Below are positions 12,539 through 15,188 of a stretch of DNA of 15,489 nt, one piece after another; positions within the stretch are counted from its first letter, which is position 1, and each line of letters begins with the position of its first letter. The position numbers and the translations under genes are program-made. The DNA lies in the NCBI GenBank assembly GCA_054661495.1, contig BAAFSQ010000235.1:1-15489 (forward strand), given 5' to 3'. The DNA is from Zygophlyctis sp. KS116. Lineage: Eukaryota > Fungi > Chytridiomycota. The notes beneath the pieces are model-generated. The model was not told where the DNA came from. It worked only from the letters and a program-made list of their open reading frames with translations, and did not search any database.

Positions 12539-13775
12539 TTAATGACTAGCTAAATGACGATCCAAGTCATACTGTCGACGAAATTTAAATGAACATAATC
12601 CACAAGGAAAGTTCAAATCGACTTCAGTTGTATAATTACCAGTTAATGATTCAATAAGAGTTGGAGAATTGAATGCATCCTTTCTCTTTTTTCTGGGATT
12701 TGGATTTATATGAGTCTTTGAATGTCTTTGCAACAAATTCTTACTAGAGAATTTTGATCCACATTCAGGCCATTCACATTCAAATGGTTTAATTTTTAGA
12801 TGAAATGATTTGACATGAACAGAAAGACTTTTATCAGTCATAAACATCCTTTCACAACCATCAATCCCACAACAAATATTTGGAAAATGAGATGGATCAT
12901 GAGTTTTTAAATGTGATGTTAAAATATCCTTTCTTTTAAAAGTTCTTGAGCAAACATGACAAGTTAAATTAGTATGATTGTCTTTGATATGTTTTTGAAG
13001 TTGAGACCACTTTGAGAAACTAGCTTCACAATCAGCTTGACCACAATGATATAATAATTCATTAGAATGAGTTCTAGAGTGAGCTTTTAGTTTTGATGGT
13101 GTTGGAAAACTTTTCTCACACTCTTGACAAGCATAAGGTAATTTCCCAGTATGAACTGAAGCATGCCTTTTTAAATGATCATGTTTTGCAAAAGTTTGAT
13201 CACACTCTTGACACTAATTATAAATTTTATTTGTCTACCTTCCAAGTTTTTTTCTTCTCATGAGTAAGCATATGTCGCTTTAAATGAGACTTGTAAGCAT
13301 ATCTACTTGAGCACCCTTCCACATGACAAGCATAAGGCCTCTTTCCTTCTAAAGTATCCTGATGCACTACTAAATGTCTTGTATAATGCTCTTTTCTTAT
13401 AAAAGTCTTGAAACATCCCTCATGAGTACATGCAAATGGTCTTCTTCCTGAATGAGTTAATAAATGTCTTGATAATCTTCGTTTAGTAGCAAAAGACTTT
13501 AGACATCCTTCATTCGGACAATAAAATGATTCCGTCTGATTTTCAAAGAGATTTTGAGTCTGATCTTGAAATCCTGTTCCATTCAATGCAATTTGATCTT
13601 GAACTACTTTAGCTTTTCCAAATTTCCGATCATTTATAACTAAAATCTCTTCCATATCTGAGTCCGGTTCTTCTTCTGATGTATGAGACTCTTGTGAGAT
13701 TATATCCTCCTCCTCTGAAGAGAGATCGGGAGGGAAATAAGCATCTTCTTCACTACTAAGATCTAGAGATGGCAT
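12539..13775 (-). CDS. Transcription factor IIIA-like C2H2 zinc-finger protein (10 fingers)
   Basis: Acidic N-terminus, nine consecutive C2H2 fingers (including CGQADCEASFSKWSQLQKHIKDNH), a basic spacer (RKKRK), then a tenth finger CGLCSFKFRRQYDLDRHLASH. This layout is like fungal TFIIIA (S. pombe Sfc2). One intron, 13214-13238. Confidence 0.8.
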
Positions 13776-13889
13776 AGCAAACCTTTTTTAGCCTGAGCCT
13801 TGTGTGTCACCCTTGAGTCTCAAACCAAATCTCACGGCACGTTTCAGCAAACTGATCAGGCGTCGTCGTGGCGTTGGGTAGATTAAATA

Positions 13890-14258
13890 ATGAAAACTAC
13901 TACCGGAAAAGGCTCTAAAGCAGAGCTCAAGGATAAAATACAAATCTCTTACAAACTTGAAGACTTTGATGATGAAACTCTAATCTTTGAAATGGATGAT
14001 CATTTAGTAATGGACTATGAAATCAAGACTGAGATTTTGGAAGATTATTCTTCTACACAATATGATAAGCTACCTCCCCTAGAGTCAATATTATCATCTT
14101 CTTTACCTATCAAAACTCCTGCACTGCCATTATGGAGGTCTGATTCTAGAAAGAATTTAAATACCTTTATAGCTCCACATATTCTATCTCAAAGTAGTAA
14201 TCAGGTAGTTTCTGGGTCTTTACCATCTTCTAGGAGGAGTAGACTGAATATGATTTAA
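13890..14258 (+). CDS. Small disordered protein with PRAS40 (AKT1S1)-like motifs
   Basis: Intronless 122-aa ORF with an A-rich start context that fills the gap between neighbours. Motifs FEMDD, SLPIKTP..W and GSLP..RSRLN occur in PRAS40 order. The ORF is likely real; the family call is an inference. Confidence 0.6.
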   Translation: MKTTTGKGSKAELKDKIQISYKLEDFDDETLIFEMDDHLVMDYEIKTEILEDYSSTQYDKLPPLESILSSSLPIKTPALPLWRSDSRKNLNTFIAPHILSQSSNQVVSGSLPSSRRSRLNMI

Positions 14259-14321: not shown

Positions 14322-15188
14322 TTATGGTCTAGTTGAAATACTTGCAAACCATTCATTTTTATATATATCTGAAATTTTAAATCTCTTGTTTGAGTTTATT
14401 TCCAGCATGGGTAAAATACAAGATGCTATAGGAGATGGTAACAGAATTAACATTTGATGCTTACCAATCGTAAATTGTACATATCTTGAATCATTGCAAG
14501 TTGCCTGTTCCCAAGGTAATCTTTGAAAATAGAAAATTAGAAAAAGAATTCCACAAGACCAAATATCTAGAGCAGGTAAATCAAGTTCACCATCAGTAAA
14601 TGCTTCAGGTGCCATGTATGGTATACTTCCAGCTCTTTTTTTAGATTTATGAAAACATTTTCCAAATGGTTCCTGAAAGATTTCTGCTTGTCCGAAATCT
14701 GAAATTTTGAGTATTTTCCTTGAATCACTTAATAATACTTTGGTTAGTCTTTAACAAATACAGTTTTCCGGTTTTAAATCTTTATGTGCAACACCCATTT
14801 GATGCAAATAACAAACTCCAGCTATCAATTGACTAAAATAACTACAAGTCTCTGATAGAGTAATAGACTGATTTAATAATAAATTTAACATATCTCCACC
14901 TGGTGCATACTCTAAAACCATAAACCATACATTCTGATCTTGAATCAAGTCTATTGTTTTTATAATATTTTCATGAAATAGACATGATCCAATAGTAAAT
15001 TCTGCTGTTATTCTTTTTAGATATTCCTTTTGAGATTCATTATCTCTCTTGCTCCGAAATTCTTTAATTGCAAATGTTTCTTGAGAATCGGACATGGTTG
15101 CTAATTTAACCTGATATTACTCTAAATGTATTACAATTGATGATGATCCATAACCAATTATTTTTTTATTGATATGATATCCATTCAT
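14322..15188 (-). CDS. Ser/Thr protein kinase, fungal HAL/NPR (Hrk1/Sat4-like) family, catalytic domain only
   Basis: IGYGSSSIV, FAIKEFR, EYLKRITAEFTIGSCLFHENIIKTIDL, HKDLKPEN, DFG, GSIPYMAPE, DIWSCG, LPW..A..D. Introns are 15111-15134 and 14738-14761. An alternative in-frame start lies at 15260. Confidence 0.88.

What the first reader, a model, noticed from the sequence alone, without database searches (positions are those of the whole stretch)
13890..14258. Candidate fungal PRAS40-like TORC1 regulator with a TOS motif
Seen: the 122-aa orphan has three motifs in order: LIFEMDD (FEMDD at 13986-14000), SSSLPIKTPALPLW, and C-terminal FIAPHIL..QVVSGSLPSSRRSRLNM. Known (from memory): human PRAS40/AKT1S1 has the Raptor-binding TOS motif GLFVMDE, then KSLPVSVPVW (mTOR site S183), then RIAASMRAL..QVFGDLPRPRLNT (mLST8-binding region and Akt site T246). 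The 4E-BP1 TOS motif is FEMDI. PRAS40 is usually described as animal-specific and absent from yeasts. Inference: this may be a divergent PRAS40 homolog kept in an early-diverging fungus. The Akt phospho-acceptor would be lost (RSRLN-M instead of RPRLN-T), giving a possibly Akt-independent TORC1 inhibitor or substrate.
Basis: partly seen in the sequence, partly recalled or inferred. Interest (0 to 1): 0.85.

Follow-up and report, generated by a model that had tools for sequence, protein, structure and literature searches.

The report
Minimal fungal PRAS40-like TORC1 regulator
This small gene is a stripped-down member of a protein family found across chytrid fungi and an aphelid that appears to be the fungal counterpart of PRAS40, a brake on the growth-control kinase TORC1 that the literature treats as animal-only, and the family also resembles the plant S40 proteins.

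Summary
The 122-aa ORF is a real single-copy gene: RNA contigs from three studies lie on it, and orthologs keep four short blocks while the linkers drift. It belongs to a family across chytrids and an aphelid, mostly 230-550 aa long. Homology to PRAS40 rests on two independent lines. (1) The family's N-terminal domain, folded without any motif, has an arthropod PF15798 (PRAS) cluster as top Atlas hit (TM 0.66, 195 residues). (2) Fungal core profiles rank human PRAS40 first among 177,635 PDB sequences with TOS, S183 and GDLP in register, but weakly (E 0.1-0.16; one profile missed it). Synteny shows the window gene is an ortholog that lost the N-terminal domain. Correction: loss of the T246-type site is lineage-specific; 10 of 16 long members keep R-x-x-S/T in the tail. 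15 of 28 members also hit plant S40 (PF04520). No member reaches the PRAS cut-off and TORC1 binding is untested. One GenBank chytrid entry already carries the automatic name; I found no paper. No earlier scan note covers this.

The parts
13890..14258 (+). Single-exon, single-copy ORF, 122 aa: minimal PRAS40-like protein lacking the family's N-terminal domain
13980..14000 (+). TOS-like motif LIFEMDD (F33-D37), candidate Raptor-binding site
   Evidence: F-x-[LMFI]-[DE] present in 27/29 members; aligns to human FVMDE
14091..14135 (+). Block 2, LSSSLPI..P...W; invariant S71 aligns to human S183; tail is the candidate Lst8-binding strand
   Evidence: S71 and P73 invariant in 28 sequences; aligns to KSLPVSVP; strand role inferred
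14163..14195 (+). Block 3, FIAPHILS; the only predicted helix (residues 96-102); candidate FRB-binding element; also matches the S40 PPH motif
   Evidence: F, P, H invariant; AF2 helix; PF04520 hits
14214..14255 (+). Block 4, G-S-L-P then RRSRLN; G-x-L-P aligns to human GDLP; no R-x-x-S/T acceptor in this clade
13776..13889 (.). 114-nt spacer shared head-to-head with the TFIIIA-like zinc-finger gene; too short to hold the lost N-terminal domain
   Evidence: 45-77 nt in orthologous loci
12539..13775 (-). TFIIIA-like C2H2 gene (exons seen), upstream synteny anchor
   Evidence: 45-53% identity of the first exon to the divergent neighbour in L001, L002, L007
14322..15095 (-). Protein kinase gene (exons seen), tail-to-tail downstream synteny anchor
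   Evidence: 39-59% identity to the same neighbour in L007 and L009

Best explanation
The gene is a miniaturised ortholog of a chytrid/aphelid protein family that shares ancestry with animal PRAS40. Shown by computation: family membership, loss of the N-terminal cysteine-motif domain, coiled coil and RVxF motif, and loss of the C-terminal R-x-x-S/T site. Inferred: the mostly disordered protein docks on TORC1 at several points like PRAS40. FEMDD enters the Raptor TOS pocket, block 2 offers S71 to TOR and its tail pairs as a strand with Lst8, and the block 3 helix covers the FRB substrate-recruitment surface. It would act as a tight substrate and competitive inhibitor. Without the T246-type site it would not be released by AGC-kinase phosphorylation and 14-3-3, so its level or TOR's own phosphorylation of S71 would set the brake.
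For: Membership: 32.1 bits against a profile of long members only, best of 5,000 shuffles 12.7; only hit in the genome, E 1.9e-6; hhalign 97%. Synteny with a domain-bearing ortholog, L007. N-terminal model (pLDDT 81.6) has an arthropod PF15798 cluster as top Atlas hit, TM 0.66 over 195 residues, next 0.32. Human PRAS40 is top PDB hit for two core profiles. One member hits PF15798 over positions 34-121 of 130, E 0.12. GenBank names KAJ3045212.1 'Proline-rich AKT1 substrate 1'. Raptor pocket residues R54, R305, R446, Y475 and the FRB domain are conserved in this genome. Fungal TOS recognition is established in fission yeast (PMC8542387). Human PRAS40 114-245 alone inhibits mTORC1 (PMC13401988).
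Against: No fungal member reaches the PF15798 cut-off (best 13.4 of 27 bits); the window protein hits nothing in Pfam or PDB. PDB ranks are sub-significant; profile A8 missed PRAS40, A3 found nothing, and A9 was chosen after seeing GDLP. The Atlas hit compares two predicted models, about 70 aligned residues are a coiled coil, only 27% of the cluster carries PF15798, and I could not fetch its sequences. Block 3 did not align to the human FRB helix in any printed alignment and its predicted helix is 7 residues against 21. No binding data.
Confidence: 0.72

Rival explanations
1. It is a true PRAS40 homolog and TORC1 substrate but not an inhibitor: a phosphorylated adaptor or output, in long forms perhaps recruiting PP1 through RVxF, with the mini form a reduced remnant.
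For: 14/16 long members carry R/K-x-V-x-F just before the TOS, suggesting a scaffold role. Even in animals PRAS40 loss gives no global mTORC1 hyperactivation (PMC6325617). Block 3 differs from the human helix.
Against: The mini clade lost RVxF and the N-terminal domain yet keeps all TORC1-facing blocks under strong constraint, which matches the minimal inhibitory human fragment (PMC13401988).
Confidence: 0.15
2. It belongs to an S40-like family that reached PRAS40-like motifs by convergence, because any TORC1 binder must fit the same pockets; there is no common ancestor with animal PRAS40.
For: Sequence scores favour S40: 15/28 members hit PF04520, two exceed its cut-off, whereas PF15798 is barely touched. 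Short linear motifs converge easily.
Against: Convergence of motifs does not explain the shared folded N-terminal domain with an arthropod PRAS cluster, nor GDLP and the R/acceptor spacing in register.
Confidence: 0.08
3. The motifs bind something other than TORC1 (for example Atg8, a phosphatase or another WD40 protein) and the resemblance is chance.
For: FEMD-type acidic-aromatic motifs are low in information; nothing was tested physically; the window protein itself has no database hit to PRAS40.
Against: Four blocks in the human order, the N-terminal fold match, and the published link of Arabidopsis S40-7 to the TOR complex (PMC12097154).
Confidence: 0.05

Closest known systems
PRAS40/AKT1S1 (Pfam PF15798), human and invertebrate
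   Same: Order of TOS, S-L-P with the S183-equivalent serine, helical element, G-x-L-P and basic tail; long fungal members share an N-terminal fold plus coiled coil with an arthropod PRAS cluster and often keep R at P+3 and S/T at P+6, as in R243/T246.
   Different: Below the Pfam cut-off; block 3 reads F-x-x-P-H; the window protein is 122 aa, has no N-terminal domain and no R-x-x-S/T site; long fungal forms add an RVxF motif.
Plant and green-algal S40 senescence regulator family (Pfam PF04520), e.g. Arabidopsis S40-7
   Same: S-x-P-I/V-x-I-P and P-P-H blocks; 15/28 members hit the family; an Ulva protein found by the fungal profile also has a TOS-like DIFELDD; S40-7 is a published TOR-complex interactor (PMC12097154).
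   Different: The window protein has no PF04520 hit and lacks the S40 C-terminal part of the model (matches end near position 140 of 167).
TerminaTOR (engineered human PRAS40 114-245, S183A; PMC13401988)
   Same: Same span, from just before the TOS to R-L-N, without the N-terminus and without T246.
   Different: Natural; keeps the S183-equivalent serine; inhibition untested.
4E-BP1, S6K1, fission yeast Psk1 and Atg13 (TOS substrates)
   Same: TOS-like pentamer; FEMD is identical to 4E-BP1's first four residues.
   Different: No PF05456 match in the genome (weak test); no kinase domain; TOS is N-terminal to three further conserved blocks.

Membership tests
PRAS40/AKT1S1 | Pfam PF15798 score above 27 bits | tested here: not met
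   Window protein no hit; best family member 13.4 bits, E 0.12
PRAS40/AKT1S1 | TOS motif of the F-x-hydrophobic-acidic-acidic type | tested here: met
   FEMDD; 27/29 members; aligned to FVMDE
PRAS40/AKT1S1 | S183-type S-L-P site followed by V/I-x-V/I-P | tested here: met
   S71 invariant; aligned to KSLPVSVP
PRAS40/AKT1S1 | Long amphipathic FRB-binding helix (human 212-232) | tested here: inconclusive
   Only helix predicted is at the right place but 7 residues; not aligned to the human helix
PRAS40/AKT1S1 | G-D-L-P block before the basic tail | tested here: met
   GSLP in the window; GDLP in five relatives incl. the aphelid; aligned to human
PRAS40/AKT1S1 | Akt/AGC site R-x-R-x-x-T246 | tested here: not met
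   0/5 in the mini clade; R-x-x-S/T in 10/16 long members
PRAS40/AKT1S1 | N-terminal domain of long invertebrate-type forms | tested here: not met
   Absent from the window gene and not found elsewhere in the genome; present in syntenic orthologs and matched structurally to a PRAS cluster
PRAS40/AKT1S1 | Binds Raptor, mLST8 and FRB and inhibits TORC1 | not testable with these tools
   Partner surfaces on Raptor and TOR are conserved; Lst8 not checked; no complex modelling available
Chytrid/aphelid family of SPPG_01304 (this work) | Significant score against a profile of long members only, plus synteny | tested here: met
S40 senescence regulator (PF04520) | Pfam score above 22 bits | tested here: not met
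   Window protein no hit; relatives P0028 24.6 bits and P0030 28 bits pass
Tco89 (PF10452) and 4E-BP (PF05456) | Pfam match | tested here: not met
   No hit for the protein or the genome (controls uninformative)

The most novel reading that the evidence does not exclude
Animal PRAS40, this fungal family and plant/algal S40 proteins form one ancient superfamily of multi-motif TORC1 pseudosubstrate regulators older than the animal-plant split, and the 122-aa protein is a natural switch-less minimal TORC1 inhibitor that lost its folded domain, RVxF motif and AGC-kinase release site.
Probability: 0.45. Interest if true: 0.88.

Novelty: new variant of a known kind. Interest (0 to 1): 0.74.

Why it matters
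PRAS40 is described as an animal-specific addition to TORC1 (PMC3236823), and a 2025 survey of 183 fungal proteomes that included Spizellomyces and Powellomyces lists no PRAS40 in its query or result sheets (PMC11836306). A chytrid/aphelid family moves its origin to at least the animal-fungal ancestor. The S40 link would give the plant S40 proteins a concrete mechanism. The long forms point to two unstudied features, a cysteine-motif N-terminal domain shared with invertebrates and an RVxF motif. The mini form is a ready test of which elements are enough to brake TORC1.

Tried and rejected
Single-sequence searches of Pfam, PDB and the ESM Atlas were blank. PF15798, PF04520, PF10452 and PF05456 scans of the genome were blank with uninformative controls. 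A hidden intron or longer N-terminus was rejected: RNA contigs are gapless and the spacer is 114 nt. A split-off N-terminal gene was not found; the one candidate on contig C17 is a coiled coil of an LRR gene. Repeat proteins P0012-14 and P0032 were dropped as spurious hits. Foldseek on PDB gave only weak GFA/MsrB/cereblon/yippee-type matches and VIA-align only coiled coils. The core tree is poorly resolved and does not place the organism. Yang 2017, Oshiro 2007 and Van Leene 2019 were not available. Spliced models (Raptor, L007, L012) were searched exon by exon; the joined step was left out.

Full report
Observation. It lies head-to-head with a TFIIIA-like gene across 114 nt and tail-to-tail with a kinase gene. 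Contigs from three independent metatranscriptomes cover 13891-14178, 13935-14162 and 13892-14119 without gaps and with at most one mismatch; the only other long piece in the 3.5 kb tested lay on the kinase gene. These are contigs, so they suggest but do not prove transcription. The genome (12.7 Mb) holds one copy. Its placement among chytrids rests on the named relatives below and on earlier scan notes; I did not place it independently.

Close relatives. Iterated searches found four orthologs of 105-111 aa at about 50% identity. Their loci share neighbours with the window: the divergent TFIIIA-like gene in L001 and L002, the kinase in L009, and TFIIF-beta in L002, L008 and L009. Conservation is confined to four blocks: TOS region 9-10/12, block 2 12-13/18, block 3 7-9/10, block 4 13-15/17, against 4-8/28 in the first linker; synonymous sites are close to saturated.

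A wider family. A profile of eight cores against 1.84 billion representatives returned 37 proteins. Named ones come from Spizellomyces (SPPG_01304), Powellomyces, Rhizophlyctis, Chytridium, Dinochytrium, Irineochytrium, Phlyctochytrium, Chytriomyces, Boothiomyces, Nowakowskiella, the aphelid Amoeboaphelidium and the green alga Ulva. No named Dikarya or Mucoromycota member appeared, but one non-iterated search cannot show absence. Long members (230-550 aa) read: C-x-C-x-N ... C-x-x-C domain, coiled coil, low-complexity linker, R/K-x-V-x-F (14/16), TOS-like motif, S-S-L-P-I, F-V-A-P-H, basic tail. The window protein belongs to it: 32.1 bits against a long-only profile versus 12.7 for the best of 5,000 shuffles, sole genome hit, hhalign 97%.

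Synteny fixes the direction of change. Locus L007 has the same TFIIIA-like gene upstream (45% identity) and the same kinase downstream (57% and 39%), and between them a gene whose exons carry CGCLN, CLVC and YSHAF before the coiled coil and core. Locus L012, beside the LRR and CAP-Gly genes of the same block, hits the N-terminal profile at E 4e-10. So the window gene is an ortholog that lost the N-terminal domain, and that domain was not found elsewhere in the genome.

Link to PRAS40. First, an AlphaFold2 model of Spizellomyces residues 1-235, which contain none of the motifs (pLDDT 81.6), found as top Atlas match a cluster of 681-aa, mostly arthropod proteins of which 27% carry PF15798, TM 0.66 over 195 residues; the next row was a bacterial GFA protein at 0.32. 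The coiled coil alone, about 70 of 235 residues, cannot give that score. Second, the 28-sequence fungal core profile ranked human PRAS40 (5wby) first of 177,635 PDB sequences, E 0.16, with FVMDE and KSLPVSVP in register; a nine-sequence profile of blocks 2-4 ranked 5wbu first, E 0.1, adding GDLP. These are sub-significant, the second set was chosen after seeing GDLP, and two other profiles missed PRAS40. Third, one member hits PF15798 over most of its length at E 0.12, and GenBank's automatic name for the Rhizophlyctis member is 'Proline-rich AKT1 substrate 1'. Together I put common descent at about 0.85. By the Pfam test the protein is not a member, so I file it as a divergent homolog, not as PRAS40 proper.

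The T246 question. Taking S183 as the serine of KSLP, the human register is P240, R243, T246 (T246 as Akt site from PMC6325617; residues 244-246 from memory). Chytridium, Dinochytrium, Phlyctochytrium and Irineochytrium end P-S-P-R-K-x-S, and Spizellomyces P-K-S-R-K-T-S-F: arginine at P+3 and serine at P+6. Ten of 16 long members have R-x-x-S/T in the tail and none of the five mini members does. The loss is recent. The seven AGC kinases found in the genome look like Ypk1, Sch9, two Pkc1, an S6K-type and two NDR kinases by eye, with no PH-domain Akt seen (not exhaustive, PKA not searched).

Mechanism. In human mTORC1, PRAS40 binds Raptor by its TOS motif, mLST8 by a strand and FRB by helix 212-232, and is released by T246 phosphorylation and 14-3-3 (PMC6325617). 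In this genome Raptor keeps R54, R305, R446 and Y475 (PMC8542387 prints R335, where the human chain has lysine, also conserved) and the FRB domain is highly conserved. The modelled core is disordered except for a helix at residues 96-102. I infer TOS to Raptor, block 2 to TOR active site and Lst8, block 3 to FRB, giving a tight substrate and competitive inhibitor with no AGC release switch. The engineered human fragment 114-245 has the same span and fully inhibits mTORC1 (PMC13401988). That the strand follows S183 directly is from memory. All binding steps are inferred; inhibitor versus plain substrate is open.

S40 link. Fifteen of 28 cores hit PF04520, best E 2e-6, and two relatives pass its cut-off. 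The Ulva protein has a TOS-like DIFELDD before the shared blocks. Arabidopsis S40-7 is shown among published TOR-complex interactors with a top AlphaFold-multimer score (PMC12097154). This suggests one superfamily, at about even odds; I could not compare the S40 and PRAS profiles directly.

Novelty. PRAS40 is called animal-specific in PMC3236823, and the 2025 fungal TORC1 survey has no PRAS40 column in its supplementary sheets. Searches for a fungal PRAS40 or a PRAS40-S40 link found no paper, within a library that lacks most subscription journals. One automatic annotation exists. Verdict: real gene, probable divergent PRAS40 homolog in a new minimal form; new variant of a known kind; interest 0.74.

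Noticed in passing
window 13868-13875; L002, L008, L009 upstream of the ATG: A GTGGCG(T/C) element lies within about 25 nt upstream of the start codon in the window and three orthologous loci although the spacers are otherwise unalignable by eye; candidate core promoter element.
   Followed up: no
P0015, P0017-19, P0023, P0026-29, P0031, P0034, P0038-40: 14 of 16 long members carry an R/K-x-V-x-F motif 30-100 residues before the TOS, a PP1-type docking consensus; lost in all short and mid-length members.
   Followed up: partly
P0019:1-150: The N-terminal domain has C-x-C and C-x-x-C pairs and weak structural matches to GFA/MsrB/cereblon/yippee folds; it has no Pfam family.
   Followed up: partly
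P0006, P0016, P0020, P0007, P0009, mini clade: Proteins range from over 500 aa to about 105 aa, suggesting stepwise trimming in compact-genome lineages; some shorter records are exon fragments (P0007, P0009 have upstream exons).
   Followed up: partly
L001, L002, L008 versus window 14322-15095 and L007, L009: The kinase gene between this gene and TFIIF-beta is present in the window, L007 and L009 but not called in L002 and L008: lineage-specific loss or move.
   Followed up: no
P0018, P0040: Two GenBank models fuse the family member to an unrelated upstream gene (UPF0047; a WD40 protein named coatomer beta'), probably annotation artefacts that hide the family.
   Followed up: no
G000:C57:1210-4165 and C76:33456-33752: Raptor and TOR genes are present and well conserved; seven AGC kinases found, none with a PH domain seen.
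   Followed up: partly
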